From assembly GCA_002269645.1 (NCBI GenBank), contig NIVC01003765.1, positions 1-64,000 on the forward strand: 64,000 nt of DNA, given 5' to 3'. Every line of letters begins with the position of its first letter. Positions within the stretch are counted from its first letter, which is position 1. Below, piece by piece: positions 32,728-50,931 of the stretch. A program made the position numbers and the translations under genes. Source of the stretch: Macrostomum lignano. Its lineage: Eukaryota. The notes under the pieces are model-generated. The model saw only the letters and a program-made list of their open reading frames with translations. It did no database searches and had not been told where the DNA came from.

Positions 32728-34515
32728 ATGGCCTCAAGCTATAATGCTGGGCGACCGCTGCCGCTTGTGGTGTCCGTGAAAGAGCGAACTGAAACTGGAC
32801 CAAGGTTTGAGCTCGATGCAGAAGTGCTGAAGCAGATGATGGATTTGGACAAACTGAGCAGCGCCAAGGTGGCCGTCATCAGCGTGACCGGAGCCTTCCG
32901 CACAGGCAAGTCCTTCCTGCTCAACTTCTTCCTGAGATACCTCCGAGCTCTCAGTCGAGGTGACACTCGTGACTGGATTCTATCTGAGGACCAGCTAGAC
33001 GACGGATTCCACTGGAGATCCGGGATTGAGAGAGACACCACCGGGATCCTCATCTGGTCCGAGCCGTTCTTCATCCGCAAGCCCGACGGACAAGAGGTGG
33101 CCGTGCTGCTGATGGACACTCAGGGCACATTCGATCACCAGTCGACTCAGCAGGACTGCACAACTATCTTTGCCTTCAGCACACTGATGAGCTCAGTGCA
33201 GATCCTCAACATTTCTCAGAAGGTCCAGGAGACGGATCTGCAGCACCTGCGGCTGTTTGTCGAGTTCGCTGGGATGGCGAAGGGCTCGAAGGAGAAGGCG
33301 CTGCAACACCTGTGGTTCCTTATCAGAGATTGGCAGAATCCTGATGATTTTGAGTACGGAGTCGCTGACGGAGCGGAGTATTTAAAGCAGATCTTAAAGT
33401 GCGACGAGCAGATGCCGAGAGAGAACCAGGAACTGAGGCAGGGCATCACGCATCACTTCGAGCAGGCGTCATGCTGTCTGCTGCCGCATCCTGGAAACGC
33501 CGTAGCCTCGTCGAAGTTCCGCGGCGAGCTTAAAAAACTTGATGCAATGTTTGTCGACGAGCTGGAAAAGTTTGTGGCCCTCATCGCGTCACCTGAGAAC
33601 ATTCCAGTGAAGCAGATCAACGGCAGAGACTTCAAGGGTGTGGACTTCTTCGCTCTGAAGGAGTACTTTGACGCCATTTGCAGCAGCAGGCTGCCAACTC
33701 CGAGAAGCATATTTACGGCCACCGTCGACATGATCAACGTTCTCGCTGCCTCGGAGGCGAAGCAGCTCTTTGAGACGAAGATCCAGGAGTTCTTCCGATC
33801 GGAGTCGTCGTTGGACATTAGCTCTGCCGAGATGGACAAAGTCCTCGCCGGCATCGAGAAAGAGGCGTTAAAGCTGTTCAACTCTCGGTGCATGGAAGTC
33901 GCGGATTTTGACGTTGACTGCGTGAAGAGGAGGCTGCAGGAGGAGCTGCGATCGATTGGCAGCAAGCAGGCGCTGCTGCTCCAAGAGACTGCAAGGAAGA
34001 AGGAGGCGGACGCGAGGGCGGACTTGCTGGCGAAGGAGCTCGAGACCCAGCGGGCGGCGTACGCTGAGGGCGTGCAGAAGATGCAGCAGTTGGAGGCTGA
34101 CTTCCAGAAGCGAGTGGAGGAGATTCGGGCGAACAGCGTGAGCAAGGAAGAGATGACTCGACGACTGAAAGTGGAATCGGATAGTTACAACATGCGGATC
34201 AGCTGTCTGGAAACCGATAAAAGGTTTATGGAAGGTCGTCTCTCTGAATTAAGCCGCAGCCAAAGCGAGAAATCCAACAGTGCTGTGCAGCGGCTTGAAC
34301 GCGAGGTCAGCAGTCTTCGGAATGAGAAGGAAAAGCTCGACAGAGAACGAAACGAGGAGCGTAGAAACGCTAACAGAGAAATTTCGGAGATCCAAAGAAA
34401 CTTGGAAGCAGTGATGTTCGCGCTGAAAAATGAAGAGGCCAACAGTAGACAGAGTGCCCAAAAGCTGAACGAGATACAAGATAGCTTCAATAAAGGCAAC
34501 TGTGTGATGATGTGA
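32728..34515 (+). CDS. ATL: Atlastin-family GTPase, TM-less, coiled-coil C-terminus, CaaX (CVMM); 595 aa, intronless (copy 1)
   Basis: P-loop GAFRTGKS, ERDTTG, LLMDTQG, LIRDW and CCLLPHPG are characteristic of atlastins. There is no TM hairpin. The tail is E/K/R/Q-rich and helical and ends in CVMM. The symbol denotes family, not orthology. Confidence 0.9.
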   Translation: MASSYNAGRPLPLVVSVKERTETGPRFELDAEVLKQMMDLDKLSSAKVAVISVTGAFRTGKSFLLNFFLRYLRALSRGDTRDWILSEDQLDDGFHWRSGIERDTTGILIWSEPFFIRKPDGQEVAVLLMDTQGTFDHQSTQQDCTTIFAFSTLMSSVQILNISQKVQETDLQHLRLFVEFAGMAKGSKEKALQHLWFLIRDWQNPDDFEYGVADGAEYLKQILKCDEQMPRENQELRQGITHHFEQASCCLLPHPGNAVASSKFRGELKKLDAMFVDELEKFVALIASPENIPVKQINGRDFKGVDFFALKEYFDAICSSRLPTPRSIFTATVDMINVLAASEAKQLFETKIQEFFRSESSLDISSAEMDKVLAGIEKEALKLFNSRCMEVADFDVDCVKRRLQEELRSIGSKQALLLQETARKKEADARADLLAKELETQRAAYAEGVQKMQQLEADFQKRVEEIRANSVSKEEMTRRLKVESDSYNMRISCLETDKRFMEGRLSELSRSQSEKSNSAVQRLEREVSSLRNEKEKLDRERNEERRNANREISEIQRNLEAVMFALKNEEANSRQSAQKLNEIQDSFNKGNCVMM

Positions 34516-35743
34516 CAGCTGAGGCTGCCCTGACTACAGAAGAATTTTTCCCATTCTGCTGTTGTAATGACAGTTTTTCATGAAATTCTGTTATACAAAA
34601 GTAGATCAACAAATGGTTTTATCGAATAGCTGTACCAGTATTCGAATTTCCCCCAAGATTTGTGACCCTAAAGAGCATCTAAAACAGGACCTGTGTACTG
34701 ATAATTGGATTGCATCATTTTCCTGATGCGTGATAAAATAAAATTGCAAGACAAACGCGTTACGCTTATGTCTATTTTAGCTTTGATTTGGCTTTGTCAC
34801 TCGCTTCAGCATTCTCTAACCCAAAGGGAATCAAATAAGGCGGTCGTTTCATAAGCTCGAAGTCCACATCGTCGGAAAGACAATTGCTTGTCATTCACAA
34901 CTAGGGAGATGCTTGACAAGCTTCGAGCTTTTAATATTTTGAGCTCATGGCGATATGAATAACCGAACTTATTGATTTCTGAATGGGTAAAAGGCTATCT
35001 CAATCCCTGCACTTGTATTATCCACTCTTTTCATCTCGTAAGAGTGCCCTAATTGTGAAGGATTTTTAAGGTATAATTTTTTATGCCTGAGCGCAAGGCT
35101 CTTTGCGAACCTCTCCGGCTGCTAAGGTGGTTTTGGTGCCCTCCGGGCCGCTGTAAATGCCTCGGAGGCGGCTACCACTCCTCACGAGCAGGCTTTGAGC
35201 AGGCTTTTACGCAAGAATTCTTAGGGTTTTTCAAGGAATTTGGGGAGCTGATTTCTGCCTGCCATAGCATAAAGCTAATAATGAATATTAAGAACATTGA
35301 GAATGAAGCACAGTTGCAGTGGCAGAACAGCTCTGTGAAGGCACAGAGCGTTGGTGAGGAAGCGGGGGAAGCCTGATACCGGAGTAACTTGGCAGACATT
35401 CAATATACGAGTAATAAAATAAATTAATTTATCTGAGGTTAAATATATTTGTGTATTTAAAATTTCTGAAGAACACGAGGCTAAACAGGAAATTTATGTC
35501 AGAAACTGACAGAATATTCCAAAATCTTGAGTAGTAGGATAATTCTGGATGGAACCCTGTTTTGATAGTACGCTCGTTCCTAAAATCAATGATGTAGCTC
35601 GTACCGCTTTCAAATAAAAATTTGTTTGAACCAGAATGTCTGCAGGAATTCAAAAAAGGCAAAATATGCGGTGAATAAATAACAAATATAGTCAATTATG
35701 ATTACATCAAACATAATGTAAAGTAAAACACAATTTTGATCAG

Positions 35744-37624
35744 CTATTTCCCATCAGCTTCCTTTCCTTTTGGATCTTCCTGCTTCTGCGAAGCTGGGGG
35801 CTGAATCATGGGAAACGGGATGAAGGTTGGGGTTGAAGCCGCGGCTGCGGCAGAGCAAGAACTGGCGCCTCTTTTCTCGCTGCCACTGAAAAAATTCGAA
35901 ATCGTTCCTTTAACAATTTCACCCCCAGCAGCCTGCAAAACTCCGAAAAGAAAATTCTCCCACTTAGCACTGCGTTCGGCTTCCTGCTCCCGACGTCTGC
36001 GCTCTTCTTCCATGTGCTTCTCCCACTGCGCCATCATCTGCTTTGCGTTGGCATCCTGCTGCCTGCGTTCCTCTTGGCTCTCGCGCACCTGGCGCTGCAG
36101 CTCCTCGTTCATCTTTAGCAGGGATTCTATCTTGGCTGCCTGCCGCGAGCTGCGCGCCTCGGACTCCTGCAGGGCCAATTGGCGTTGCATGGACTCTTTT
36201 TCTAGCAGCGACCGCATCTCCTCCTTGGACACGGACGACTCCAAGATTCTTTTCACTTTTTCCTGGAATTCCTGCTCCAGTTGCTGCATCCTTCTGTTGG
36301 TATCAACTTTCTCATCAAGGAGACGTTGAAAGTCTTGCTGCAGCAACTCTCCTTTCTTCTGCTCAGCGATCTTGTCAGACTTCAGCTGGTTCATTAGTAT
36401 CAAATCCTGCACCTCCCTCTGTAGATCGTCGTGCAGTTTTCGTCGGCACTTGTCGCAGTCGGTTGAGTCCTTCTGCATGCAGCGCTTGTCGAATTGTTCG
36501 AGCGATTCGTCGGCCAATTTCTGCAGCTGTGGCTCCAATTCGATTGCGTCAACAGCGGATGCGGAGGCTGAAATCGGCCTGGCCTTGTCAACAAACGTCT
36601 GTCTGGCGGATGCGGCAACCACAGCGTTCGTCAATTCGACGGTGGCCGAGAACAGCGACTTTGGCGAAGGTAGCCTGCCGCTGCGGAAGGCCTCGAAGTA
36701 GACTTTGGCGAAGTTCAGCAGCTCGCGCCCAGTGAGTTCTCTTCCATTAACTGCTTTAATGACAAGCTTTTCAGGTGATAGCACGAGTTCCACAAACTTC
36801 TCAACCTCCTCAACAAAGTCTTCATCTAGCTTTTCCAGCTCCCCTCGAACATTCGATCTAGTCGCACACTTCCCAGGGCTGGGCAGCAGGCAGCAAAACA
36901 TGCGAAATATTTCCTAATGCCTGCGCGGAGCTCACGGTTTTCAGCCGGCATGTTCTCATCTGACGCCACTACCTTGCGTAGATATCTCATACCGCCGGCA
37001 TGGCCGTTCTCGAACTCATCGGGGTTTTGCCAGTCCCGAATTAGAAACCACAAGTCTTGAAGGACCTTTTCGCTTTCATCCTTTGCCATCGAGGCGAACT
37101 CAACGAACAGTCGGAGGTGCTGCAGATCCGTCTCTTGAATGTTCTGCGAGATGTTGAAGATCTGCACTGAGCTCAGTAGTGTGCTGAAGACGAAGATTGA
37201 GGTGCTATTCCTGCTGAGTCGACTGGTGATCGAATGTACCCTGAGTGTCCATCAGCAGCACGGCCACCGCTTCTCCGTCGGGCTTGCGGATGAAGAACGG
37301 CTCGGACCAGATGAGGATGCCGGTGGTGTCTCTCTCGATCCCGGCTCTCCAGTGGAATTCGTCATCGAGCTGGTCATCAGATCGAATCCAGTCTCGAGTG
37401 TCTCCTCGACTGAGAGCTCTGAGGTATCTCAGGAAGAAGTTGAGCAGGAAGGACTTGCCTTTACGAAATGCCCCGGCAACACTGACTACAGCGACTTTAG
37501 ACCGAAGGAAGCGCTTAGATGAAAGAATTCGACGCTCGATGCCAGCGTTCAGTTTGAATCTCTCGACGCTCTCAGACTCACCGCTTGCTAGCTCTGCCAG
37601 GTAGACAACCTCGCCAGTCGTCAT
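35744..37624 (-). pseudogene. ATL: Atlastin-family GTPase copy 2, disrupted by two frameshifts
   Basis: ATG at 37624. A +1 insertion near 37207 (GACTGC to GAATAGC) creates TAG after 139 codons. A second shift occurs near 36902-36906 (KYF / MFCCLLPSPG). The remaining frames are open and paralog-like to the stop at 35744. Confidence 0.8.
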
Positions 37625-38504
37625 TGTCTTTGCCTGTTATCTGTTTGTCTGCAACATTTTTTCAGTTTTAATTTGTCGAACGTAGAATAGCAACAATGCA
37701 AACAGCAAAGATGCACTTTCAAGATCCATAAACTAAAACTTTTGGAGTTTCGAGACGTTACTACGAGCTATATGTATTCAAAAAGTACAGCTAGACAGAG
37801 TTTTCATTTTGAATTACCTAATTTAGATATTAGGTATTAGGGAAGATTTAAGGACAGAAATGAAAATTCATGAGATTTTAAATTTCAGTCAGTTGGTATG
37901 CGAGTAATACTTAAAATAAATCTGTGGAGTGCAACGTGAGCGTGACGTACAATTTGTATTTTTAAACTCTTGCAAAATTTGTTTTTGTGCACTCTGCTTA
38001 ACCGTCGTCATTTCTAAAATAAGATTTAACTTGCACTCGCACTATCTTAGACGCCAAAGCAGATTCGCCACGCCCCACCAGAGCGTCACACCAGCAGCAT
38101 TATGCGGGTATTGTACTAAACTGCTTTTAAACTGGTATTGTGTCTGCATGCAGTCTAGTTCGGTTTCGTTTGCTACGAGCGTACTTGTAGACGGGTAGAT
38201 ATTCACCTCGTTGAGTATGAGCATAGGTCGTGAACATTGCCAAGGAGCTACTGCTATCGTGCTATGCAAAAAAATAAAATGGAATTTTCCGTTATTTTCC
38301 GAAACAACTTGTGCGGAAAGAAGGCCTGCAAGGGACGGATACTATTCTGCTAAGAGCCAAGCTACATTAAAAAGTATTTGTACTCGTAACAACGTCGCAT
38401 GAGTTGAATAGCATATTAATTGCCTTCAAACGCAATTTCTAAAGCTATTATTTGCTAATCACCGCTGTCATTAACTCCCAACTCTTTAAGTACAAGCACG
38501 CAAA

Positions 38505-40175
38505 ATGGCTTCATCAGTACGGAGCGGACCGATCCACCTCGTCCAGCTAGCTGAAGACACAGAAGATGACTGCATGCGATTCGAGTTCAACGCTGATATC
38601 TTCAAGCAAATGCGAAACGCTCAAAAGCTAGCGACCTGCAAGGTGGTTCTCATTAGCGTGGCCGGAGCCTTCCGCAAGGGCAAGTCTTTCCTGCTCAACT
38701 TCTTCCTGAGATACCTCCGAGCTCTCAGTCGAGGTGACACTCGAGACTGGATTCGATCTGATGACCAGCTCGATGACGGATTCCACTGGAGAGCCGGGAG
38801 CGAGAGAGACACCACCGGGATCCTCATCTGGTCCGAGCCGTTCTTCATCCGCAAGCCCGACGGACAAGAGGTAGCCGTGCTGCTGATGGACACTCAGGGC
38901 GCATTCGATCACCAGTCGACTCAAAGAGACTGCGCTACGATCTTTGGATTCAGCACACTTCTGAGTTCGGTGCAAATTTTCAACATCTCGCAGAACATCC
39001 AGGAAACAGATCTGCAGCACCTCCGACTGTTTGTCGAGTTTGCTTCAATGGCGAGAGAGTCGAAGGATAAGAAAGTTCTTCAGCATCTGTGGTTCCTCAC
39101 CAGAGACTGGCAGAATTCGCACGAGCATGACTATGGTTCTACTGGTGGACAGGAATACCTGGACAAAGTCCTTGCGTGCGATAGCCGTAAGCCGAAGGAG
39201 AACCAGGAGCTCAGGCTGGGCATCAAGCGGTACTTCGAGCGCGCATCCTGCTGCTTGCTGCCGCATCCAGGAAAGGCAGTTGCAGCCAAAGACTTCCGAG
39301 GTGAAATACATCGACTGGATCCCGAGTTCGTGGATGAAATGGAGAAGTTCATTCCAGTCATTGCCAGTCCACAAGCGCTGGTAGTAAAAAAGGTGAACGG
39401 AACCGAACTTCCTGGAAAAGAGCTATTCAAGTTTTTTGACATATATTTCGAAGCCTTTAAAAACGGGAAAATGCCTACTCCAAGAAACATTTTCGATGCA
39501 ACAGTTGAGATGGCAAACATCACCGCTGCTCAGGGGGCGAGGCAGATGTTTGAAGACTCTCTGGATCCGGACCTCCATGATGACGAGTTTTTCGACATTC
39601 TAGAAGTCCTGAAGCAACAGTCACTGGAATATTTTCTTTCCAACTGCATGCAGCCAGAATCCGCGGCTACCAAGAAGACTCTGGAGAAGCTGCAAGAGGA
39701 GATCCAAGGGCTGCTTGATAACAAGAAGTTCGTCAGGAGGCTGCAGTCGAGGACTTTGAGCGCCGACAGAAAAAACCAACAATTGCAGCACGAAATCGGG
39801 AGACTGCAGCTACAGAACATGGACGTATTGCAACAGATGGAAAACATGGAGGAGAACTTTAGGAGGACTGAGGAAGAAATCAGGAGGCAAAGCGTCTCAA
39901 AGGATGAAATGGATCGCTTACTGCAAGACTTGTCAATGCAGCACCTTGCTGACAAGATGAAAATTCAGGCTGATAGCGAGAAGCTTGTGGGAAAAGTGAA
40001 CCAACTCGCGGAAATGAATTCACAATTGAAAAACCAGCTCTCTGTTCGCCAGCAAGAGGCTCAGCGCTCCTTTGAAAGGCGAGAACAGTTGAGGCAGAGT
40101 GAGGTGGCCGAACTGCAAAGTCGGATTTCCCAGCTCGAGTCGAGAAAACCAAAAAGATCGTGCGTCTTGATGTAG
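38505..40175 (+). CDS. ATL: Atlastin-family GTPase, TM-less, coiled coil, polybasic CaaX (RKPKRSCVLM); 556 aa, intronless (copy 3)
   Basis: GAFRKGKS, GSERDTTG, LLMDTQG, LTRDW and CCLLPHPG motifs. No TM segment. Ends RKPKRSCVLM. Confidence 0.92.
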   Translation: MASSVRSGPIHLVQLAEDTEDDCMRFEFNADIFKQMRNAQKLATCKVVLISVAGAFRKGKSFLLNFFLRYLRALSRGDTRDWIRSDDQLDDGFHWRAGSERDTTGILIWSEPFFIRKPDGQEVAVLLMDTQGAFDHQSTQRDCATIFGFSTLLSSVQIFNISQNIQETDLQHLRLFVEFASMARESKDKKVLQHLWFLTRDWQNSHEHDYGSTGGQEYLDKVLACDSRKPKENQELRLGIKRYFERASCCLLPHPGKAVAAKDFRGEIHRLDPEFVDEMEKFIPVIASPQALVVKKVNGTELPGKELFKFFDIYFEAFKNGKMPTPRNIFDATVEMANITAAQGARQMFEDSLDPDLHDDEFFDILEVLKQQSLEYFLSNCMQPESAATKKTLEKLQEEIQGLLDNKKFVRRLQSRTLSADRKNQQLQHEIGRLQLQNMDVLQQMENMEENFRRTEEEIRRQSVSKDEMDRLLQDLSMQHLADKMKIQADSEKLVGKVNQLAEMNSQLKNQLSVRQQEAQRSFERREQLRQSEVAELQSRISQLESRKPKRSCVLM

Positions 40176-41189
40176 ACTTCGCATTGTCTCCTTGCTGAGG
40201 CTTTTAGCTTATGAGGCGATATCTGTAGCTAATTGAATAACGATATTATTCGTTTCAAAATCAGAAAAGTACATGTAGCTTTTTGCATGCTTGTTACGCT
40301 AATATTTAATTCAATTTTTATTTAAGAAAATTTTAGTTTCTGAAATTCAAGTAGCTACCAAAAAATTATTATAATTAGTGGTTGCGAGAAATAATGATAT
40401 GACATTGTAATATTGATATTCGTTTATTAACCCTTTTTAACACATCGTATATGTTTCAAGTAAGTTTTATATCCTCATATAACAGTAGCAATGCACGAGA
40501 ATATATCAATTTGTCTATCTTATTCTAAAATTGCACTCTAATGCTCTACGTAACTTTTTAGCTCCCACAGATATAATTTCATGTGTTATTTTAAACCATC
40601 CATTGTTTACCTTGTTTGCGGTGTTTTATTTCAAGCTAATGACATCACAGATAATGAGCTATCTTTATTTTAAATTAATGATCGAATTTTTAAGTTTGCA
40701 TATCTAACAAATATATAGTTTAACTACTCAGCAATAATCTTTCTGGCTTACACCAAACTAGATGCGGATTTTTTAGTACATTAGTGGTCCTTATCCTTAT
40801 CCTTATCCTTATTTAGATTAATCCTTAACAATAAATTATTTTAATAATATTATTATTGTCTTTTATGAAATACCGTAGTTGTAGTAAAAGTAACTTCTTA
40901 GCGAAAATTTTATTTAACAAATGGGTCAATAACCTATCTCGCGGCTCATCAGGCCCTTCGGAATAGCTAGCAGACAAGGCTCTGTCAGTAGTCGGCAGTA
41001 GGCCATAGACTAATTCGTTTTCGTCTCGTGTTCCTTTTCGCCCCCCTCTGAAAGTAATATCGCAGTCATGAGCCAATAGGAAGGAACGGGGGAAAGGGAT
41101 GCTAAAAGTGAAGGTCGAGCGAGACAAAAATAACTGGCTCAGATTAGCACTCCATTCTATTCTTTCCTCCGTGGTTGGAATTGTCATAG

Positions 41190-41615
41190 TTCGTATTTAC
41201 ATATTGGTTTTGTCAGCCTTAACTGAGAATAAAGCCATCCAAATTGAGAATCCTGCCTACGCTGACTGCGAAGGGCCTGGCTGCGTGCAGCCTTAGTCTA
41301 TGGGCCATAGACAATAAAGGACAAGCAAAGTGATAAAAAGCCATCCAATGTGAGAATCGATTGGTCTTTTAAAACTTTGCTTGTCCTTTATAGTCTATGG
41401 CTCATAGACTAGGCTGGACGCAGCCAGGCCCTTCGTATTCAGCGTTGGCAGGATTTTCACATTGGATGGCTTTTTTATCACTTTGCTTGTACTTTATAGT
41501 CTATGGCCCATAGACTAAGGCTGCACGCAGCCAGGCCCTTCGTAGTCAGCGTAGGCAGGATTCTCACTTTGGATGGATGGCTTTATTCTCAGTTAGGCTG
41601 ACAAAACCAATATTG
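41190..41615. mobile_element. Foldback/MITE-like element built from inverted ~105-bp units
   Basis: ATATTGGTTTTGTCAGCC...AGTCTATGGGCCATAGAC...AAGCAAAGTGATAAAAAGCCATCCAATGTGAG (41190-41355) is the reverse complement of ~41455-41613. A further inverted unit lies between them. Confidence 0.75.
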
Positions 41616-44600
41616 TTCCCTTTTGTCTATGGTTTCCGGCATTCATACTTGCGGTAACAATTTAATTGTTTGTCGGCTTTTTTCGATTGTTGCCGGATTT
41701 CAGACGAATGTATTTGGCTATCAAAACAAGGAACAACAATAGCAACACGGCGAAAGTGTTTCATAGTCACAAAAAGTTCTTAAGAACAAACCGATCGAAT
41801 CAATTGTTTTACTTTCCGTAAAAGTTGAATGTGCAGTTGTGGAACTGACCACCACAGAGGCTTCTCGGCAGGTCTTGGCCGCCCTCGGGTGCTTTCATCA
41901 GCTCACTGAGTCACTCTCAAGTCGGTCCAACATTTCCAGATCTTCGCTACCTAGCTCAGGCAGCCCGTTGGAACTGGACGACGCATCCAGGTTGTCCATC
42001 TCCAGAACGTAGCGCGTGCTCGACTCTCGGGTGACAAAAGCCAACTCGTCCGTGGAGAGTCCACATATTTCTCCGCCAGGAATGTTTGCGTAGCGAATCA
42101 TAGCTACTTTTCCTATTTGCACTCCGAATAGGAGAATTAATTCAAGCTCAAAATCAACTAGAGAATTAACTCATGGCAGCCAGGCTAGCTGTCTTCACTG
42201 TCCTTTAAATTTGCCATAAACGATTAATTATCTGTACAACCCTTTCATTTAGAGAGCAACTAAATTTGCCATAGACGATTGATTATCTCTACAACCCTTT
42301 CAAAGCGCATTCCGGCAACAATCGCATTTCATACTCAGCATCCGCACTATGTCTGGGCCATAGACAAGGGAAGTCAAAAGGGTACAATAATGACATGTAC
42401 CGATTTTTTTCGGCAGCAATTGCACTAATCGCCGGCTAAAGTTCTATGTAATTATAATTTATACTGTTGTCTATGGTACTAAGCTTTACATTTGAAATAT
42501 ACAAGTTGTAAAAACATTAACTTGAAATTCTTATTATATGCATATTGAGTTTTCTATTTATTGATGTTGGCTATAGAAAATTGCAACGGGCGCGGGCTGC
42601 CGTGCGTTTCACCCCGTTTCAATTCAACACGTCTAGGCCAACTATGGCTAACGAAAACTCGTGCGTCATTGGCAAAAGCACGAGTGCGACTAGAATCGTT
42701 CCTAACGACCCTAAACCCTCGTGCGCTTGTGGATAAGGAATTCAGTGCAGTACATTGGCTGCTACAGTTCGGCCTTGAACTCGTCCGTTAATGCATTCAG
42801 AAGCCGCGCGTTATCTAAATGAAAGCATGGCAATCATGGGTTGCCATGGAGACTTTTCACAACACGAGACAGCAAAAGCGAGCTGATAAATTGTGAAGTC
42901 ACGGAATATTTTCATGCGCTGCCGCGTGAAAATTAAACTAAAATAATCGAGTATTATGTAGATAAGAACTCTAAAACCCCAGTAGAAATGCGAAAAATAA
43001 ACACCACCCCAAAAGCCGGCCGAAACTTTATGCACTGCGTGCAGGAAGCAGTTAGAATAGGGATCTCGCATAGGGAGAGGAAAGGAGGGCAGAAAAGCTG
43101 ACTGAAAAGTTCTTCTGGCTGGTCTATTTATCAAAAAAGATCTAGAATCTGTTCGGCTGTTATGCTCAGGTACGTACCTTGTTATGAACTATGTAAAGCG
43201 GCTGGGTATAAATGCGGCTCACTGTTCACCGAAAATCGGACCAGTTTTAATTCTTAACTAGAATTCGCTGCAACTCAGTGCACCTTCAAGGTAAGACTCA
43301 AATTTAAATTGTTTTTTCAGTTTTCGCGACTGTTTGGCAAAGTCATCAAATAAAGCCGAAACTCTCTGTAGGACGCACTAAAAGTAGATGAGCGTAAAAT
43401 ATCATTCCTGATTACGTGAAAAAGCTTAAGTTTTCTCTTAAAGTAATTTGTCGGATACGGGAAATAAGATCTAACAATTTCCACATTGAGTCAAACCTTT
43501 TTTCTATACGAATTTTTCCATTTCGCTCGTTCCTAAAAGCAACAGAATGTAAAGAGTTCGATTTAGCACACTAGAGAGAGATGGAACAGAGAGAAAGAGA
43601 GAGAGATAATTAAGTCTAGTCTAAACGCACGAACTCCCACTTCCAAGACACTGGGGAACAAGTGCCTACTCGTAGGTATGCACAAAATCAAATAACTGCA
43701 GCGGATCCTCTGGTGGTCTGTAGACGTCTGAGTCTTGTAGGTTGTCGGGCTGGTTAGCTTGTTGAGCGGTAACGGCGACCGGTTTCGGTGAACCGCGGTT
43801 GCTTCCGTGAGTCCCTTAACTTTATCTGTGGGCTGTAGCAACTTCCTTTATTTGTTTCACGTTCTGTCTTCCTCGCTCATGTTTGAATCTCTCTTCAATT
43901 CTGATTGGCTGCCTCTCAGCGCCTTATCTCTATCTTTGCCTTTCTTTGCCTTTTCGTCGCGCCTTATACCCACTCCCCATTGCACACTAATGTTTTTGTT
44001 ATTTTTTTTCGACCCCCTCGCGCTCTCGTGCTCTATTCATCCCCCGGTCTCTTACCGTGGATGCAACCCCCATCCTCTCTAATTTAGTCAATGCCTTATA
44101 AATATATGAATTTGGGCCCTGCGCCCTCTTGTCTGGTTTTGTGTGTTCAACTCCAATAAAATATTGACTAGCGTTTCCTGATATTATTTACATGGGTCGA
44201 CCAAAGTCGAGAGCGGGAGGATCAGAAGTCTTGACGGTCCTCGAGCTCGGAATTAACAACAGAACGTGCGGCCTTATGAACAATTGAATTCCCTAAGTTT
44301 CTGCTATAGGTCCTCCTGAAGGGTGTCTTCTTCGTTACATCCGAAACGTAACGGATAACTTAAATCAGTCAATAAATCTTCTAGGAATATATCCTAGGAA
44401 ACAAGGAGGCCTTCTTAAATCCCGGTGTAAAAAAGTCGTCGTTCGGACTCGTACATGTCAGGGTCCCCGGGTACGACCGCGGTACAAAGTATTTTAATCG
44501 AAAAGACGTCTTTTTCTTACCAACAGCGAACGATTTCCGGACTGTAGAAAAAGCGTTTCATACTACTTATAGTCGGATTCAGTAGGGTATACAAAATGTG

Positions 44601-44684
44601 TTTCGGATGCGTTTTGCTAAAATAATAGTTGATAGAATATTAATACGATATGTCGACAAAAACGGCTGTCGTAAACTTACTTAA

Positions 44685-45915
44685 CAGCAGGAATACCAAG
44701 CCATTTTTCCGCCCGTCGAACTACCAAGAGGGGGGAAAATCCCCCTGACAATTTTTTTTGCTGCGCCGGAACGGAGCAACGCAGGCATACGAAATTCAAG
44801 AACACGGGCTAACTTTTTGTTGCGCACCTTCTCAAACAAGAATCAAGTCGCCAGCCATCCGGACCGTCGAGATATTCGACGATTCTGCCAGAAGGTCGGA
44901 TTTTTCCCCTAAGCGCTAGTGCATTCAGTACACCCCTGTGCGCCAATCAGCACTGCACCTCAGTTCAGCCTTGCCAAGCCTCCAAATTTCATCAGCACGT
45001 CGACCACATGTGTCTGCATCAGCTCTGACTTTGTTGGTCACTAGCCTTCACCCAGGCGGAGCTTCTGGACCTTCAACAGGTGGCACCAAGTGACTATGGA
45101 CACTCTGATACGAATTTCTCGAGTTTCGCTGATCAAGCCTCGACAGTGGGCAAACCTCAACTGCTAGGTATCCTCAGCTAGTCAAGGGGGGCCGTAGCCC
45201 AGCGGTAGCGCAGCTGCTCTGGTGTGCCAGCGACCCAGGCTCGATTCCAAGTGCAGTCACATTAATTTGGGGCTGAATTGGAATCTCGGCTTGGCTCTGT
45301 TCGTGCAATTAACGGCCTTGAGAGCCAACCCCCAAGGCGCAGTGAAGTGTACATGCCTAACGATAATATAAAGTTAGGGCCGCTGTACACTCCTGTGTGA
45401 GTGTGTGCCTGCGTACGTATCCGCGCGCTCAGGGGAGTCGGCGCAATGGGCAGTAATGCCTCTCGCCGGTTGTGTGCCTATGTCGCTTAAAGTCGCTTAT
45501 GCCAGGGTGCACACAACCCCACTGCCTCTAAAAATCCTCAGCTAGTCTCTCAAGCCTTCCATCATCACCCTGACGCCGTCAGCACCTTCAACAGATTACA
45601 CCAGGTGACTACGAGTAGCCTGATAGGAATTTCTCGAGTTTCACTGATCAAGCCTTGACAATGGGCAAGCCTAAACCGTGGGACAGCCTCAGATAGTCTC
45701 TCAAGCATTCAGTCATCACCCGGACGCCGTCGGCACCTTCTGGCAGAATCGTCGAATATCTCGACGGTCCGGAGAGCTGGCGACTTGATTCTTGTTTGAG
45801 AAGGTGCGCAACAAAAAGTTAGCCCGTGTTCTTGAATTTCGTATGCCTGCGTTGCTCCGTTCCGGCGCAGCAAAAAAATTGTCAGGGGAGATTTCCCCCC
45901 CTAGTAGTTCCACTG
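44685..45915. mobile_element. Non-autonomous TIR element A (TTAA|CAG...CTG|TTAA, ~175-bp TIR, 151-bp internal units, SINE-interrupted)
   Basis: TTAA at 44681-44684 and 45916-45919. 44719-44896 is inverted relative to ~45735-45910. The left arm is near-identical to element B. Confidence 0.85.
45184..45533 (+). mobile_element. tRNA-derived SINE inserted in element A, 14-bp TSD
   Basis: Head GGGGCCGTAGCCCAGCGG (A box) ... GGCTCGATTCC (B box) and a short A tail. TSD ATCCTCAGCTAGTC at 45170-45183 and 45534-45547. The empty site is visible in element B at ~46983. Confidence 0.88.
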
Positions 45916-46491
45916 TTAATCAACTTGTTAGCGCTATAGTAGCAAAGAGCTAAATCTGGAAACGCTTATCAATCGGTCCGGATTTCGTGCCTCAGAGATG
46001 GGTCTTCTTTTTTAAGTCTTCAAAAGTCAGTCTTGAGACTGCTCCGAGTCTGATTTTTTACTCAGATTTTTGCTTATGTCATGCGCGTTTGATTAAGGGG
46101 TCATGAATGTTTGATTATTACCGTATATGGAATTAAGCAAATACAACATCTGAGAACCGGTTCCTTGCAAATAAACGTTGGTCCTACGTAGGGTTCTGAG
46201 TCACTACTGTTTACACATGACTCATTCTAAAAATAGATATTCTAAAAATAGATATGACTCATAATAACTCATTTAAAAACAGATTGCGAGTTTAAATTGG
46301 TTTTATTAGATGTTACTTTAAGTAGTGCATTAGGGTATGACTAACGGCTCTCTACAAATGGACCTGTCCTGTTCTGCTTGTGGCAGAATGATTGCGTCCT
46401 CTTCTTTCCGATAGCAGCCATAGTATGACAAAGTTGAAGTGACGGTTGGTTGGTTGTGAGCTGGGTAACGGTGCGGGGTTTGTTTGCTTAA

Positions 46492-48368
46492 CAGCAGGAA
46501 TGCCAAGCCATTTTTCCGCCCGTCGAACTACCAAGGGGGGGAAAAAAATTCCCCCCCCTGACAATTTTTTTTGCTGCGCCGGAACGGAGCAACGCAGGCA
46601 TACGAAATTCAAGAACATGGGCTGACTTTTTGTTGCGCACCTTCTCAAACAAGAATCAAGTCGCCAGCCATCCGGACCGTCGAGATATTCGACGATTCTT
46701 CCAGAAGGTCGGATTTTTCCCATAAGCGCTAGTGTATTCAGTACACCCCTGTGCGCCAATCAGCACTGCGCCTCAGCGCAGCCTTGCAATGCCTCCAAAT
46801 TTCATCAGCACGTCGACCACATGTGTCTGCATCAGCTCTGACTTTGTTGGTCACTAGCCTTCACCCAGGCGGAGCTTCTGGACCTTCAACAGGTGGCACC
46901 AAGTGACTATGGACACTCTGATACGAATTTCTCGAGTTTCGCTGATCAAGTCTCGACAGTGGGCATACCTCAACTGCTAGGTATCCTCAGCTAGTCTTTC
47001 GAGCCTTCCATCATCACCCCGACGCCGTCGGCACCTTCAACAGATGACACCAGGCGACTATGAACACCTTGATGCGAACTTCTCGAGTTTCACCGATCAA
47101 GCCTCGACAGTGAGCAAGCCTCAACTGCCGGACACCCTCAGCTAATCTCTCAAGCATTCAGTCATCACTCGGACGCCGTCGGAACCTTCAACAGATGACA
47201 CCAGGCGACTATGAACACCTTGATGCGAACTTCTCGAGTTTCACCGATCAAGCCTCGACAGTAGGCAAGCCTCAACTGCCGGACACCCTCAGCTAGTCTC
47301 TCAAGCATTCCGTCATCATCCCGACGCCGTCGGCTCTTTCAACAGATTACAACAGGTGACTATGAACATCCTATTGCAAATATGTCAGGTTTTTCTGATC
47401 AAGCTTCAATATTGGGCAAACCTCAACTGCTGGACATCCTCAGCTAGTCTCTCAAGCATTCAGCCAGCACCCCGACGCCGTCGGCACCTTCAACAGGTGG
47501 CACCAGGGGAGTAATGACACCTGAGCGTGATTTTTCATCATGCTCTTAACATTTCTGAAGCTCTCAGATTTTTTTAAGCACGAACATTGGTATAGTTAAG
47601 CTTGAACTCATGTTGCTGTATATTTATATTATTATTACACATACTTTTATGCATACGAGCTACATACATATTTTATTCGAAAAGCTGTTTAGTTTATTCA
47701 GCTATAATATTGAACCCAATGCAGAAAGGGTTATGCTTTTAAAAAGCCAGTAAATTCAGTCGGTTTTTTCATTTTTTTAATGATTCAGAAATGTTAAGAG
47801 CATGATGAAAAATCACGCTCACGTGTCATTACTCCCCTGGTGCCACCTGTTGAAGGTGCCGACGGCGTCGGGGTGATGACTGAATGCTTGAGAGACTAGC
47901 TGAAGATGTTCTGCGGTTGAGGCTTGCCCATTGGCAAGGCTTGATCAGCGAAACTCGAGAAATTCGTATCAGAGTGTCCATAGTCACTTGGTGCCACCTG
48001 TTGAAGGTCCAGAAGCTCCGCCTGGGTGAAGGCTAGTGACCAACGAAGTCAGAGCTGATGCAGACACATGTGGTCGACGTGCTGATGAAATTTGGAGGCT
48101 TGGCAAGGCTGCGCTGAGGCGCAGTGCTGATTGGCGCACAGGGGTGTACTGAATACACTAGCGCTTATGGGAAAAATCCGACCTTCTGGCAGAATCGTCG
48201 AATATCTCGACGGTCCGGATGGCTGGCGACTTGATTCTTGTTTGAGAAGGTGCGCAACAAAAAGTTAGCCCGTGTTCTTGAATTTTGTGTGTCTGCGTTG
48301 CTCCGTTCCGGCGCAGCAAAAAAAATTGTCAGGGGGGGGGGAATTTCCCCCCCTTGGTAGTTCTACTG
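46492..48368. mobile_element. Non-autonomous foldback element B (TTAA|CAG...CTG|TTAA) with long inverted arms and AT-rich central spacer (~47560-47775)
   Basis: TTAA at 46488-46491 and 48369-48372. The right arm 47775-48368 is the reverse complement of the left-arm sequences. No ORF. Confidence 0.88.
46883..47520. repeat. 151-bp tandem subrepeats inside element B
   Basis: C(C/T)TTCAACAG recurs at 46883, 47034, 47185, 47336 and 47487 (exact 151-bp period). Confidence 0.9.
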
Positions 48369-49209
48369 TTAACTTAGCTTAGTCACTTTGTTTGCATCGT
48401 GCGTTCAGCGTGTACTCAGTGAATCAGAGCGTACTCTGTGCAGTTCAATGTGCATCATTGAGCTAGCCTTGCATCGCTCCTTAAGTCTCTACCATTTCGT
48501 ACTCTCTCCACTTACTTTGCCAGTGTTCATCAGTGAAATTCAATATTATTCAAGCTTTTGCTCTCGATTTTTAACTCGTTAGACTAACTTTAGCGTAACT
48601 GCAACGTTAGATAGCTAATTTAACTATCAATAACTCGTTTAAGTAACTTTGGCTATTCTACAAATATATCGCAAGAATTCATACTCGTTATTAACAACAA
48701 TCAGTTCCTGACGTCAGAAGTGGTGGCGAAAAAGTGCTGAAAAATAAACACATACACTTAGCAACATTGAAAAGTCGCCATTCTATGCGCCAGTGAGCAA
48801 TTTCTCTTGGACTTTTTTGAAAACAAATATACGAAAAAACTGATCGGGGTAGCTTTAATCCGTCCAACCCGCGACCTCTCCCCCACTTTATTCCTCAACT
48901 CAAGTCTGCCGCGGTGTAGCTAAGTTGCGGCAAAGATAGAGAGACTTTACCTGCACTCTCAAAAGTGGCGACCACAGACTGAATCTTCTGTGATGACGAC
49001 TTTTAAATGTTGCTGAGTATATTACAGTTACGAAGGAGCTGACACATGCTGATTCGACGATTCCAGAAATGTACTTTAATTTTCCTATTCTAGCTCGTAA
49101 GGTGATGAAAAGTATTTCCTATTCGATAACACCACAACTGCAAGATATTTTGTGCGAGCTATGACAGATGAGACTAAGATCGAAATTCTTATGCAATCTA
49201 TTTTCAGAA

Positions 49210-50931
49210 ATGCCAGGAAGACCCCTCCAAGTGACGAAGCCGGTCGTTGAAGGCCAGCAGTGGGATGATGAACAGGATCGATTTCAATTTAACCGCGACT
49301 TCGCTGAACTCATTGACTCACCGGAAAGACTTGCCAAATCGCCTGTCGCCGTCATCAGCGTGGCTGGAGCCTTCCGCAAGGGCAAGTCTTTTCTGCTCAA
49401 CTTCTTCCTGAGATACCTCCGAGCTCTCAGTCGAGGTGACACTCGTGACTGGATTCTATCTGAGGACCAGCTAGACGACGGATTCCACTGGAGAGCCGGG
49501 AGCGAGAGAGACACCACCGGGATCCTCATCTGGTCCGAGCCGTTCTTCATCCGCAAGCCCGACGGACAAGAGGTGGCCGTGCTGCTCATGGACACTCAGG
49601 GCACATTTGATCACCAATCGACCCAGCAGGACTGCACCACCATCTTTGCCTTCAGCACACTGATGAGCTCAGTTCAGATCTTCAACATCTCGCAGAACAT
49701 CCAGGAGACGGATCTGCAGCACCTTCGACTATTTATTGAGTTCGCTTCGATGGCGAAGAACTCTGCAAAGAAAGTTCTCCAACATCTGTGGTTCCTCATC
49801 AGAGACTGGCAGAATCCAGACGAGTATGATTACGGAGCTAATGGCGGAGAAGACTACCTTAAAAACGTTCTTGCGTGTGATGAAAAGAAGCCTCCAGAGA
49901 ACCAGGCGCTGAGACAAGGCATCAAGCGGCAGTTCGAGGCGGCGTCCAGCTTCCTGCTGCCGTATCCTGGAAAAGCAGTCACGCGAGCGGATTTCAAGGG
50001 TCAAGTTGACAGGCTCGATAGCGACTTTGTCGAGCACCTGGATTGCTTTGTCCGCCGTATTTTGGCGCCCGAAAATCTTGTGGTCAAGAAGCTGAACGGC
50101 AAGGTGCTCACTGGTCGAGAGTTTTTCTCACTTATTGAAGTTTACTTCGATGCCTTCCGCCTTGGCAAGCTGCCGACTCCGAAGAGCATCTTCACCGCCA
50201 CCGTCGAGATGGCCAATCAATCTGCTTCGCGGGACGCAGTGAAATTCTTCGAAGATTCGATGGGCTCACTTTCGGGTCCGACAGCCATCAGCGACCAGGA
50301 GCTGAGCGACCTACTCAGTACGATGTTTGAGCAGGCGATGCAGCACTTCGATGACAACTGCATGGAGAGAGGATCGAAAGACACTGCTCAAACCAGGATG
50401 AAGCTCGAAGCTGAGCTCCGAGGACTGTTCCAGCAGCAGCAGATGCTGAACCAGCTGAAGTCGGACAAGATCGAGGCCGAGACGAAGAGCCGCATGCTGA
50501 TGGACCACATAAAGCGCATGCAGGACGAGAGCCTGGCAGCTGCACAACGAATGTGCGAGATGGAGAAGGAGTTCGCTGACAAAGTTGCTGAGATTCAACG
50601 CTCGGCGATTACAAGAGAGCAAATGGAGGAGATGCTGGTTAAGCACTCGACTGCGCAAAAGGAATTGGAAAAGCAGAATGAAAAGATGATGAAGCGAACC
50701 GTGGAGATGGCGGAGAAAAACCGGAAGTTGATGAGTAAGCTGAAGCAGAATAAAGAGGAGGCGATGCAGCAGCAGCAGGAGATGATGGAGGAGTTTATGC
50801 GGCAAATGAAGGTTGCACAGGAAAAATACAGGAAGGCGGCAGAGGATTCTTCCAACTTTTTCACAAAGTATGTTTCTCCCATTTTGTCCGCCGCCGTTCC
50901 TACAGCTTTGCGTCTTTGGTTTCAAAGTTAG
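49210..50931 (+). CDS. ATL: Atlastin-family GTPase, TM-less, coiled coil, hydrophobic/amphipathic C-terminal tail; 573 aa, intronless (copy 4)
   Basis: ATG at 49210 follows TTTTCAG|AA. GAFRKGKS, GSERDTTG, LLMDTQG, LIRDW and FLLPYPG motifs. Ends NFFTKYVSPILSAAVPTALRLWFQS with no CaaX. Confidence 0.9.
   Translation: MPGRPLQVTKPVVEGQQWDDEQDRFQFNRDFAELIDSPERLAKSPVAVISVAGAFRKGKSFLLNFFLRYLRALSRGDTRDWILSEDQLDDGFHWRAGSERDTTGILIWSEPFFIRKPDGQEVAVLLMDTQGTFDHQSTQQDCTTIFAFSTLMSSVQIFNISQNIQETDLQHLRLFIEFASMAKNSAKKVLQHLWFLIRDWQNPDEYDYGANGGEDYLKNVLACDEKKPPENQALRQGIKRQFEAASSFLLPYPGKAVTRADFKGQVDRLDSDFVEHLDCFVRRILAPENLVVKKLNGKVLTGREFFSLIEVYFDAFRLGKLPTPKSIFTATVEMANQSASRDAVKFFEDSMGSLSGPTAISDQELSDLLSTMFEQAMQHFDDNCMERGSKDTAQTRMKLEAELRGLFQQQQMLNQLKSDKIEAETKSRMLMDHIKRMQDESLAAAQRMCEMEKEFADKVAEIQRSAITREQMEEMLVKHSTAQKELEKQNEKMMKRTVEMAEKNRKLMSKLKQNKEEAMQQQQEMMEEFMRQMKVAQEKYRKAAEDSSNFFTKYVSPILSAAVPTALRLWFQS

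What the first reader, a model, noticed from the sequence alone, without database searches (positions are those of the whole stretch)
32728..50931. Cluster of TM-less atlastins rebuilt with GBP-like architecture (coiled coil plus prenylation box)
Sequence shows: four intronless paralogs with an atlastin-type G domain and helical middle region (GAFR(K/T)GKS including the catalytic Arg, ERDTTG, DTQG, RDW, LLP(H/Y/S)PG). None has the C-terminal two-helix TM hairpin; each has a long E/K/Q/R-rich helical tail, and copies 1 and 3 end in CaaX boxes. Established: atlastins are ER-fusion GTPases anchored by the TM hairpin, while their sister family, the GBPs, are soluble with long helical tails and CaaX boxes (hGBP1 CTIS, GBP2 CNIL, GBP5 CVLL) and act in cell-autonomous immunity. 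Inference: an atlastin lineage here has independently acquired the GBP plan and expanded in tandem with birth-and-death turnover. It is a candidate membrane-attacking defence or membrane-remodelling system.
Basis: partly seen in the sequence, partly recalled or inferred. Interest (0 to 1): 0.88.

Follow-up and report, generated by a model that had tools for sequence, protein, structure and literature searches.

The report
Flatworm cluster of soluble, prenyl-tagged atlastin-like GTPases
A flatworm (Macrostomum lignano) carries a tandem cluster of atlastin-derived GTPase genes that have swapped the usual membrane-spanning hairpin for a long helical tail, often ending in a lipid-attachment (CaaX) signal; the layout resembles immune GBP proteins, but similar genes occur in many other invertebrates and one such gene was described in silkworm.

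Summary
Window 32728-50931 carries three intact single-exon genes (c1, c3, c4) and one copy with two frameshifts (c2). All have an atlastin-type G domain and three-helix bundle, none has a TM hairpin, and each has a 170-210-residue charged helical tail. c1 ends CVMM and c3 ends CVLM.

The window is the first 64 kb of M. lignano contig NIVC01003765.1. Two more paralogs lie beyond a 44-bp satellite; one ends CSIQ.

The G domains are atlastin, not GBP: ATL1 303 bits against GBP5 48 bits, and Foldseek TM 0.85 to ATL1. Apart from a short gene-conversion tract covering P-loop to switch II, the paralogs are old (dS saturated) and under purifying selection.

The claim of a unique local reinvention is only partly supported. 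TM-less atlastin-like proteins with helical tails, many ending in CaaX, occur in barnacle, amphipod, insects, ticks and nematodes. Silkworm BmAtlastin-n (TM-less, cytoplasmic, antiviral) was published in 2016.

Whether the flatworm family arose independently is unresolved: its tail matches no other lineage, but the deep tree nodes have no support. A defence role is only an analogy; no expression data were found.

Verdict: a real feature, a new variant of a known kind, of moderate interest.

The parts
31307..31400 (+). Short relic fragment of a further copy (switch I / G3 region, with an internal deletion)
   Evidence: tblastn with c3 residues 89-128 gives 61-77% identity. Sequence read.
32728..34515 (+). 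c1: intact single-exon TM-less atlastin-like GTPase, 595 aa, P-loop GAFRTGKS, ends CVMM
   Evidence: ORF. Pfam GBP N-terminal domain E 8.9e-63. No TM.
34501..34512 (+). CaaX box of c1 (CVMM; X=Met predicts farnesylation)
   Evidence: Translation. The CaaX rule is established knowledge.
32896..33180 (+). Gene-conversion tract in c1 (about codons 57-151, P-loop to switch II)
   Evidence: DNA identity is 91-97% among copies here, against 35-60% elsewhere. Synonymous pS is 0.16-0.23 here, against 0.56-0.83 elsewhere.
35744..37624 (-). c2: pseudogene copy with two frameshifts (about 37203-37210, a +1 A insertion; about 36901-36903). No CaaX; the tail has a hydrophobic/Ala-rich extension related to that of c4.
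   Evidence: Three-frame translation and junction sequences. Not called as a gene in the NCBI annotation. The older model P0006 skips the shifts.
38505..40175 (+). c3: intact single-exon copy, 556 aa, polybasic SRKPKRS followed by CVLM
   Evidence: ORF. Pfam E 1.8e-66. ATL1 E 2.9e-89. AlphaFold2 pLDDT 79.5. Foldseek.
38670..38954 (+). Gene-conversion tract in c3 (codons 56-150)
40161..40172 (+). CaaX box of c3 (CVLM), preceded by 4 Lys/Arg within 10 residues
49168..50931 (+). c4: intact single-exon copy, 587 aa from ATG 49168. The annotated start is ATG 49210 (573 aa), directly preceded by TTTTCAG. It has LLPYPG, no CaaX, and a hydrophobic C-terminus.
   Evidence: ORF. Pfam GBP N-terminal domain E 7.8e-64 and GBP_C E 1.1e-5. 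573-aa annotation. Start context.
49372..49656 (+). Gene-conversion tract in c4 (about codons 69-163)
50872..50928 (+). Hydrophobic C-terminal segment of c4 (VSPILSAAVPTALRLWFQS). It is below the TM threshold and is a possible peripheral membrane anchor replacing the CaaX.
   Evidence: The segment is not among the top hydropathy windows (all below 1.6). It aligns with the c2 tail extension.

Best explanation
The locus is part of a cluster of six linked paralogs in Macrostomum lignano that encode atlastin-derived dynamin-like GTPases; at least four are intact.

Shown:
- Each intact protein keeps the complete atlastin catalytic core: the P-loop with the in-cis Arg finger, switch I/II, G4 RD, and the three-helix-bundle middle domain.
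- The third bundle helix runs on into a 170-210-residue charged helical tail instead of the TM hairpin.
- In three paralogs the tail ends in a farnesyl-type CaaX box: CVMM, CVLM (with a polybasic patch) and CSIQ. Two others end in a short hydrophobic stretch.
- All six Mlig copies form one clade, and the five readable tails are alignable.
- The paralogs are old and under purifying selection.
- A conversion tract of about 285 nt keeps the nucleotide-pocket and dimer-interface region nearly identical among c1-c4.

Inferred mechanism:
- The proteins are cytosolic or peripheral.
- GTP binding drives atlastin-style head-to-head G-domain dimerisation, possibly also between paralogs, because the interface region is homogenised.
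- The farnesyl or hydrophobic C-terminus holds the dimers or oligomers reversibly on a membrane. They would then tether or coat membranes rather than fuse them.

The most likely biological role is cell-autonomous defence or remodelling of particular membranes, by analogy with GBPs and silkworm BmAtlastin-n. This last step is the weakest, at roughly one chance in three.
For: Identity as atlastin-type:
- phmmer against the PDB gives ATL1 303 bits, RNF112 129 bits and GBP5 48 bits.
- Foldseek places ATL1 first at E 2.6e-35 with TMt 0.85.
- Invariant catalytic columns are kept in an alignment with 21 canonical atlastins.

No TM hairpin.

Helical tail: AlphaFold2 helices 387-462 and 466-545, with heptad signal in 3 of 5 tails.

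CaaX boxes: translations.

Single origin in this lineage: the five readable tails align, with a conserved S[VI][ST][KR][ED][EQ]M motif, and the six-copy clade has 100% bootstrap.

Selection and conversion: pS is 0.16-0.23 in codons 56-150 and saturated elsewhere, with dN/dS 0.1-0.5. DNA identity is 91-97% in the tract.

The genes are in the NCBI annotation of the assembly as single-exon gene models.

Precedent for a soluble atlastin with a defence role: BmAtlastin-n (PMC4926086; review PMC9005921).

A fusogen role is unlikely because atlastin fusion requires its TM hairpin and C-terminal amphipathic helix. This is established knowledge (Liu et al. 2012 PNAS, cited within PMC4926086).
Against: - No data on expression, induction or localisation could be found.
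- Prenylation is predicted from sequence only.
- c4 lacks a CaaX box, and the near-identical copy of c3 on contig NIVC01000951.1 reads CPLM, where Pro at a1 is unfavourable.
- Coiled-coil periodicity is absent in c1 and c2.
- pLDDT of the second tail helix is only 62-71.
- Heterodimerisation is inferred only from the conversion tract.
- Tandem arrays with turnover are common in M. lignano and are not specific to immune genes.
Confidence: 0.6

Rival explanations
1. The proteins are housekeeping or cell-type-specific membrane tethers or remodellers with no immune role, for example in secretory glands, sperm or rhabdite-forming cells. They would use GTP-driven dimerisation plus a lipid anchor to organise a particular organelle.
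For: The molecular evidence is the same as for the best explanation. The paralogs are old and under purifying selection rather than showing obvious diversifying selection. M. lignano has many tandemly expanded reproduction-related genes (PMC7336406, listed).
Against: No expression data were found in either direction. The one studied TM-less atlastin (BmAtlastin-n) showed antiviral and anti-microsporidian effects.
Confidence: 0.28
2. The proteins are soluble modulators of the canonical ER fusogen. They would heterodimerise through the G domain with the TM-bearing atlastin and tune or inhibit ER fusion, acting as natural dominant-negatives.
For: The G domain and three-helix bundle are 43-46% identical to canonical atlastins with all catalytic residues kept. 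Soluble atlastin cytosolic domains are known to inhibit ER network formation (established knowledge).
Against: A CaaX box, a polybasic patch and a long stalk are unnecessary for a simple inhibitor. Six diverged paralogs kept under selection are hard to explain this way. The canonical M. lignano atlastin could not be located with these tools, so interface compatibility is untested.
Confidence: 0.08
3. The array is a decaying set of retrocopies without function.
For: All copies are intronless next to a multi-exon cadherin gene. c2 has frameshifts, a relic fragment lies at 31307-31400, and the sixth copy has a frameshifted tail.
Against: Three ORFs of 556-595 codons stay open although synonymous sites are saturated. 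dN/dS is 0.1-0.5. Catalytic motifs and CaaX boxes are conserved. The genes are annotated.
Confidence: 0.03
4. The proteins are true members of the GBP family, mis-read as atlastins.
For: The Pfam hits are to the 'GBP' N-terminal model with a weak GBP_C hit. CaaX boxes occur as in GBP1/2/5.
Against: PF02263 also covers atlastins. ATL1 scores 303 bits against 37-49 bits for GBPs. Foldseek ranks all atlastins and RNF112 above the GBPs. GBP_C matches only profile positions 2-120 of 297. The tails show no similarity to the hGBP1 helical domain, E >= 0.8.
Confidence: 0.01

Closest known systems
Canonical atlastins (ATL1-3, Drosophila atl): ER-fusion dynamin-like GTPases
   Same: The G domain has the P-loop Arg finger, all G motifs and the three-helix bundle. 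These are the best sequence and structure matches. GTP-dependent head-to-head dimerisation is therefore expected.
   Different: There is no TM hairpin and no post-TM amphipathic helix. Instead there is a 170-210-residue charged helical tail with a CaaX box or a short hydrophobic end. The genes are intronless and arranged in tandem. Membrane fusion is therefore unlikely.
BmAtlastin-n and silkworm Atlastin3/4 (PMC4926086): TM-less atlastin-family proteins
   Same: Both have an atlastin-type GTPase plus a coiled-coil region and no TM. In silkworm the protein is cytoplasmic and was proposed to act like GBPs, with antiviral and anti-microsporidian effects.
   Different: Orthology is not shown: deep nodes are unresolved and the Mlig tail profile finds no similarity in the Bombyx representative or any other lineage. 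The Bombyx representative recovered here (P0176, 751 aa) has no CaaX. The flatworm proteins are shorter and three of them are CaaX-tagged.
Prenylated guanylate-binding proteins (hGBP1 CTIS, GBP2 CNIL, GBP5 CVLL)
   Same: The overall plan matches: a large GTPase of the same superfamily branch, a long helical C-terminal region, a CaaX box (with a polybasic patch in c3, as in hGBP1), and a tandem multigene family with turnover.
   Different: The G domain is only 24-26% identical to hGBP1. The helical tail is not homologous to GBP alpha7-13. No interferon system is known in flatworms. Infection-inducibility is untested.
Unstudied 'atlastin-like' predicted proteins of arthropods ending in CaaX (Amphibalanus CTIL/CVIM, Hyalella CSTL, Zophobas CTIS, Contarinia CQIL, Planococcus CGLM, Amblyomma CTLM)
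   Same: They share the architecture: atlastin-type G domain, helical tail, no TM hairpin and a C-terminal CaaX box.
   Different: The tails are not detectably homologous to the flatworm tails. Each lineage is closer to canonical atlastins than to the other non-canonical lineages. These proteins exist only as automatic annotations, and no paper was found linking atlastin-like proteins with CaaX.
RNF112/ZNF179 (PDB 9jju-9jjx)
   Same: It is the third branch of the atlastin/GBP G-domain group and gives intermediate scores: 129 bits, Foldseek 2e-23.
   Different: No RING finger is present (Pfam), and similarity is much lower than to atlastin.

Membership tests
Atlastin (canonical ER fusogen) | GBP/atlastin-type G domain with P-loop GAFRKGKS (Arg finger), switch I T, DTQG and RD | tested here: met
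   Translations. Invariant columns in a 26-sequence alignment. Pfam PF02263 E about 1e-63 to 1e-66.
Atlastin (canonical ER fusogen) | Closer to atlastins than to GBP or RNF112 in sequence and fold | tested here: met
   ATL1 303 bits, RNF112 129 bits, GBP5 48 bits. Foldseek ATL1 E 2.6e-35 with TMt 0.85. Identity 43-46% to canonical atlastins against 24-26% to hGBP1.
Atlastin (canonical ER fusogen) | Three-helix-bundle middle domain after the G domain | tested here: met
   AlphaFold2 helices 304-319/326-351, 359-380 and 387 onward. The model aligns over about 410 residues to ATL1 1-447.
Atlastin (canonical ER fusogen) | Two closely spaced TM segments (hairpin) after the bundle | tested here: not met
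   Maximum hydropathy 1.41, in the G core only. The hairpin block is absent in the alignment. No hairpin-like coding sequence anywhere in the window.
Atlastin (canonical ER fusogen) | C-terminal amphipathic helix following the TMs; ER membrane fusion activity | not testable with these tools
   No homologous segment is present. Activity needs a biochemical assay.
Guanylate-binding proteins | G domain grouping with GBPs | tested here: not met
   hGBP1 was used as the outgroup.
Guanylate-binding proteins | Homologous helical domain (PF02841, alpha7-alpha13) | tested here: not met
   Only profile positions 2-107/120 of 297 match, at E 0.005 to 1e-5, as in canonical atlastins. Tails against hGBP1 310-592 give E >= 0.8.
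Guanylate-binding proteins | C-terminal CaaX box (in a subset of members) | tested here: met
   c1 CVMM, c3 CVLM, P0005 CSIQ.
Guanylate-binding proteins | Induction by infection or immune signalling; coating of pathogen membranes | not testable with these tools
   No expression data could be retrieved.
TM-less atlastin paralogs (BmAtlastin-n type) | Atlastin-type GTPase, helical/coiled-coil region, no TM | tested here: met
   compared with the description in PMC4926086.
TM-less atlastin paralogs (BmAtlastin-n type) | Common descent (orthology) with the insect proteins | tested here: inconclusive
   In the NJ tree, deep nodes have under 40% bootstrap and non-canonical lineages form a long-branch grade. 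The tail profile finds nothing above reversed-sequence decoys.
TM-less atlastin paralogs (BmAtlastin-n type) | Antiviral or antiparasitic activity | not testable with these tools
   Needs experiment.
RNF112/ZNF179 | N-terminal RING finger plus atlastin-like G domain and TM segments | tested here: not met
   No RING hit in Pfam, no TM, and a lower score than atlastin.

The most novel reading that the evidence does not exclude
Prenylated, TM-less atlastin derivatives are a widespread but unrecognised protostome counterpart of the vertebrate GBPs. On this reading the GBP plan (large GTPase, long helical stalk, CaaX with or without a polybasic patch, tandem multigene family) was reinvented from atlastin several times: in flatworm, crustaceans, insects and ticks. 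These proteins would be the cell-autonomous membrane-coating immune GTPases of animals that lack classical GBPs, and the M. lignano cluster would be an experimentally tractable example, since RNAi and transgenesis are available in this species.
Probability: 0.25. Interest if true: 0.75.

Novelty: new variant of a known kind. Interest (0 to 1): 0.5.

Why it matters
A published review (PMC9005921) leaves open whether atlastins took over GBP-like defence functions in invertebrates that lack GBPs. This cluster shows atlastin-derived GTPases carrying the membrane-targeting device of GBP1/K-Ras: a farnesyl-type CaaX box, with a polybasic patch in c3. The database survey here shows the same device on atlastin-like proteins of many arthropods.

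M. lignano allows RNAi and transgenesis. The questions of prenylation, localisation, GTP-dependent oligomerisation and a role in infection are therefore directly testable.

The locus is also a clear case of a short gene-conversion tract confined to the catalytic and dimer-interface region of otherwise anciently diverged paralogs.

If the proteins turn out to be ordinary organelle tethers, the interest is limited to dynamin-superfamily evolution.

Tried and rejected
1. P0002 (N-terminus of c1 fused to the rest of c3) looked like a product of unequal crossing-over. Its gene span (7448 nt) equals c1 start to c3 end on this same contig, so it is a chimeric gene model or transcript assembly made through the identical conversion tract. 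It is not a deletion allele.

2. P0128 shares 'LWF.IRDW' and 'FV..A' with the flatworm copies and was suspected to be a flatworm relative. It is a nematode (Ditylenchus) non-canonical atlastin.

3. The first NJ/bootstrap run timed out. The rerun gives no support for any deep node, so the tree cannot decide between one ancient TM-less clade and repeated origins.

4. A profile of the five flatworm tails was searched against all collected proteins with reversed decoys. No real hit appeared (best E 0.12). Tails against the hGBP1 helical domain gave nothing.

5. Expression data were sought in two ways. Full-text searches were run for the Mlig gene IDs and for atlastin plus Macrostomum. Supplement searches were run in four M. 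lignano papers. All were empty.

6. The canonical TM-bearing atlastin and any GBP of M. lignano could not be located. The protein searches list only the best 120-150 hits and no eukaryotic genome search is available. No flatworm canonical atlastin appeared in the listed hits.

7. A literature search for atlastin-like plus CaaX returned no paper.

Full report
**Source of the window.** Window positions 22728-50175 are 100% identical to positions 22728-50175 of contig NIVC01003765.1 of the Macrostomum lignano assembly GCA_002269645.1 (locus). The window is therefore the first 64 kb of that 77.8-kb contig. The best protein hits are M. lignano 'hypothetical proteins' BOX15_Mlig009339g1, Mlig034242g1 and Mlig021448g3.

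**Check of the observation.**
- c1: 32728-34515, 595 aa from the ATG, P-loop GAFRTGKS, ends CVMM.
- c3: 38505-40175, 556 aa, ends ...SRKPKRSCVLM.
- c4: 49168-50931, 587 aa. The annotated product has 573 aa and starts at ATG 49210, which is directly preceded by TTTTCAG. It ends ...SPILSAAVPTALRLWFQS with no CaaX.
- c2: 37624-35744 on the minus strand, in three frame pieces. It carries a +1 A insertion near 37203-37210 and a second shift near 36901-36903. It is not called as a gene in the NCBI annotation, so it is a pseudogene.

Pfam finds the GBP/atlastin N-terminal domain at E 1e-63 to 1e-66. It also gives a weak hit to only the first third of GBP_C, the same pattern as in canonical atlastins.

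**Atlastin or GBP.** Three lines of evidence agree.
- phmmer of c3 against all PDB sequences gives ATL1 303 bits (E 3e-89), Drosophila atlastin 302, ATL3 299, RNF112 129, GBP5 48.7 and GBP1 44.
- An AlphaFold2 model of c3 (pLDDT 79.5) has the G domain and three-helix bundle. It superposes on ATL1 1-447 with TM 0.85 and E 2.6e-35. RNF112 (2e-23) and the GBPs (about 1e-18) rank well below.
- Over 323 aligned G and middle-domain columns, the flatworm proteins are 43-46% identical to canonical atlastins of 24 animals and 24-26% to hGBP1.

**Absence of the TM hairpin.**
- The highest 19-residue Kyte-Doolittle mean in c1, c3 and c4 is 1.41. It lies in a buried G-domain strand and helix.
- In an alignment with 21 canonical atlastins, the flatworm sequences follow the family to the start of the third bundle helix. 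The canonical block 'ARTPA - TM1 - TM2 - WxYxRYSGEYR' is then replaced by charged helix.
- tblastn with the last 150 residues of 24 canonical atlastins finds nothing in the 64 kb (best E 0.06, inside a minisatellite). No TM-encoding exon is therefore waiting downstream.
- The annotated spans of the c3-like gene (1671 nt), the c4-like gene (1722 nt) and P0005 (1662 nt) equal their codon counts. The genes are single-exon, unlike the neighbouring multi-exon cadherin gene at about 7-29 kb.

**The tail.** AlphaFold2 predicts two very long helices, 387-462 (a continuation of bundle helix 3) and 466-545, with an unstructured last 11 residues.
- The tails are 41-45% E/K/Q/R and contain almost no Pro or Gly.
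- A 3.5-residue hydrophobic periodicity above 200 shuffles is seen in c3, c4 and P0005 but not in c1 or c2. 'Coiled coil' is therefore plausible but not uniform.
- The five tails align with each other and share a conserved ...M.E.F....I...S[VI][ST][KR][ED][EQ]M... motif. The tail thus predates the duplications.
- The tails show no significant similarity to the hGBP1 helical domain (E >= 0.8). The resemblance to GBPs is architectural, not homologous.

**C-terminal ends.** CVMM, CVLM and CSIQ all have X = M or Q, the farnesyl-transferase class by the established CaaX rule. c3 adds four basic residues in the ten before the Cys, like K-Ras4B and hGBP1. c4 and c2 share a different, hydrophobic/Ala-rich ending.

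**Size and history of the family.** The cluster continues beyond the window.
- After c4 comes a 44-bp satellite that runs from 51852 to beyond the window end, with 276 copies inside the window.
- Next comes P0005 (553 aa, ends CSIQ) on the minus strand at about contig 67.1-68.8 kb.
- Beyond it lies a sixth copy whose tail is frameshifted.
- A 94-nt relic of a further copy lies at 31307-31400.
- Near-identical versions of the cluster sit on two other contigs. This fits the polyploid genome. One version has CPLM instead of CVLM in the c3 copy.

The six copies form a clade with 100% bootstrap. They are old: synonymous differences are saturated (pS 0.56-0.88) everywhere except codons 56-150. There pS is 0.16-0.23 among c1, c3 and c4, and DNA identity is 91-97% among c1-c4. 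This is a gene-conversion tract covering the P-loop, the atlastin-specific insert, switch I and switch II. dN/dS is 0.1-0.3 in the G domain and roughly 0.4-0.5 in the tail where it can be measured. The intact copies are therefore under purifying selection, while c2, the relic and copy 6 show turnover.

The chimeric 'protein' P0002 (c1 head, c3 body) is a gene model that spans c1 start to c3 end through the identical tract. It is not a recombinant allele.

**Is the architecture unique?** It is not. An exhaustive HMMER search of 1.84 billion cluster representatives with c3 returned many atlastin-type proteins that lack the hairpin among its best 150.
- At least ten end in a CaaX box. Named examples are Amphibalanus amphitrite (CTIL, CVIM), Hyalella azteca (CSTL), Zophobas morio (CTIS), Contarinia nasturtii (CQIL), Planococcus citri (CGLM) and Amblyomma aureolatum (CTLM). 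Three unnamed metatranscriptome or read-assembly (Logan) proteins end in CTIL, CGIF and CCIL.
- Other TM-less or tail-anchored forms occur in nematodes (Pristionchus, Diploscapter, Ditylenchus), ticks, the mite Halotydeus and Bombyx.

In the literature, Liu et al. 2016 (PMC4926086) described BmAtlastin-n: atlastin-family, GTPase plus coiled coil, no TM, cytoplasmic, and restricting BmNPV. They noted that silkworm Atlastin3/4 also lack TMs and suggested GBP-like function. The review PMC9005921 asks whether atlastins adopted GBP defence roles in invertebrates. No paper was found linking atlastin-like proteins with CaaX, or atlastin with Macrostomum.

**Independent origin?** This is unresolved.
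- The NJ tree has no support for any deep node. It places the non-canonical lineages as a long-branch grade between the GBP outgroup and the short-branched canonical atlastins, a pattern typical of long-branch artefacts.
- Each non-canonical lineage, including the flatworm one, is more similar to canonical atlastins than to the other non-canonical lineages.
- A profile of the flatworm tails finds nothing in the other lineages above reversed-sequence decoys.

These results fit repeated, lineage-specific derivation from atlastin. They are equally expected for one ancient, fast-evolving clade.

**How it most likely works.** Shown: an intact atlastin catalytic core and bundle, no TM anchor, a long helical stalk, farnesyl-type CaaX boxes in three paralogs, long-term purifying selection, and homogenisation of the nucleotide-pocket and interface region.

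Inferred:
- GTP-driven head-to-head dimerisation as in atlastin, possibly also between paralogs.
- Reversible membrane attachment through farnesyl, with or without the polybasic patch, or through the short hydrophobic end.
- Tethering or coating rather than fusion, because atlastin fusion needs its TM hairpin and amphipathic tail (established knowledge).

The biological role is inferred only by analogy with GBPs and BmAtlastin-n. It may be defence or ordinary organelle remodelling. I give defence about one chance in three.

**What could not be done.** No expression, induction or localisation data were retrievable. The canonical TM-bearing atlastin and any GBP of M. lignano could not be searched for, because no eukaryotic genome search was available and the hit lists are truncated.

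**Verdict.** The feature is real and the description accurate. It is a flatworm-specific, CaaX-bearing variant of an already reported but barely studied kind, the TM-less atlastin paralogs. It comes with a clear gene-conversion signature and a testable GBP-like hypothesis.

Noticed in passing
window 51852-64000 (continues to about contig position 65630): A 44-bp satellite (unit ACAATACAGAACAGACCAACAGACAGCCACAGCACCATTAAAGG) has 276 copies at 99% identity and extreme AT skew (0.75). It separates c4 from the next paralog. The homologous contig NIVC01000951.1 has only about 39 copies, so the array is either collapsed there or polymorphic.
   Followed up: partly
window about 7066-29343 (+): A large multi-exon cadherin (FAT-like) gene is annotated with a 2968-aa product. 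Pfam Cadherin scores E 2.8e-70 on one 1080-aa exon ORF. Its introns, and possibly its exons, are full of mini- and microsatellites, for example an 84-bp unit x 9.9 at 21932-22759 that stays in frame inside a 653-aa ORF.
   Followed up: partly
window 3792-6148: A 40-bp tandem repeat has 59 copies at 94% identity, upstream of the cadherin gene.
   Followed up: no
window 44729-48353: A nest of inverted repeats (up to 531 nt, 92-95% complementary) and direct repeats, including a 151-bp tandem array at 46882-47522, lies between c3 and c4. It is probably a foldback-type or other transposable-element remnant. Small repeated ORFs are present on both strands.
   Followed up: partly
window 32728-40175; NCBI protein P0002 (BOX15_Mlig034242g1): The public annotation joins the 5' part of c1 to the 3' part of c3 across 5.7 kb, over the c2 pseudogene. 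The switch lies inside the near-identical conversion tract. It is probably a transcript-assembly or annotation chimera and should be corrected.
   Followed up: yes
L004 4267-5937 (contig NIVC01000951.1), compared with window 38505-40175: The near-identical second copy of c3 differs by 5 synonymous and 6 non-synonymous changes. One of them turns the CaaX box CVLM into CPLM, which may weaken prenylation of that copy.
   Followed up: partly
window 49203-49212: TTTTCAG lies immediately before ATG 49210, the annotated start of c4. It looks like a 3' splice or trans-splice acceptor, so the upstream 14 codons of the ORF are probably not translated.
   Followed up: no
L002 4919-6196 (contig NIVC01000951.1; equivalent lies at about 71-72.6 kb of the window's contig): A sixth paralog (MEVPHPVQL...) has an intact G and middle domain, but the frame breaks at the start of the tail (...CRRVLKKTFSSSRNITDS*). 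Public models P0003 and P0004 fuse it to P0005.
   Followed up: partly
proteins P0141, P0160, P0177, P0253 (Halotydeus destructor): Mite atlastin-like proteins combine an N-terminal signal-peptide-like hydrophobic segment with long helical repeats and, in P0141 (P0160 has a weaker hydrophobic C-terminus), a C-terminal anchor. This would be an odd topology for a cytosolic GTPase family.
   Followed up: no
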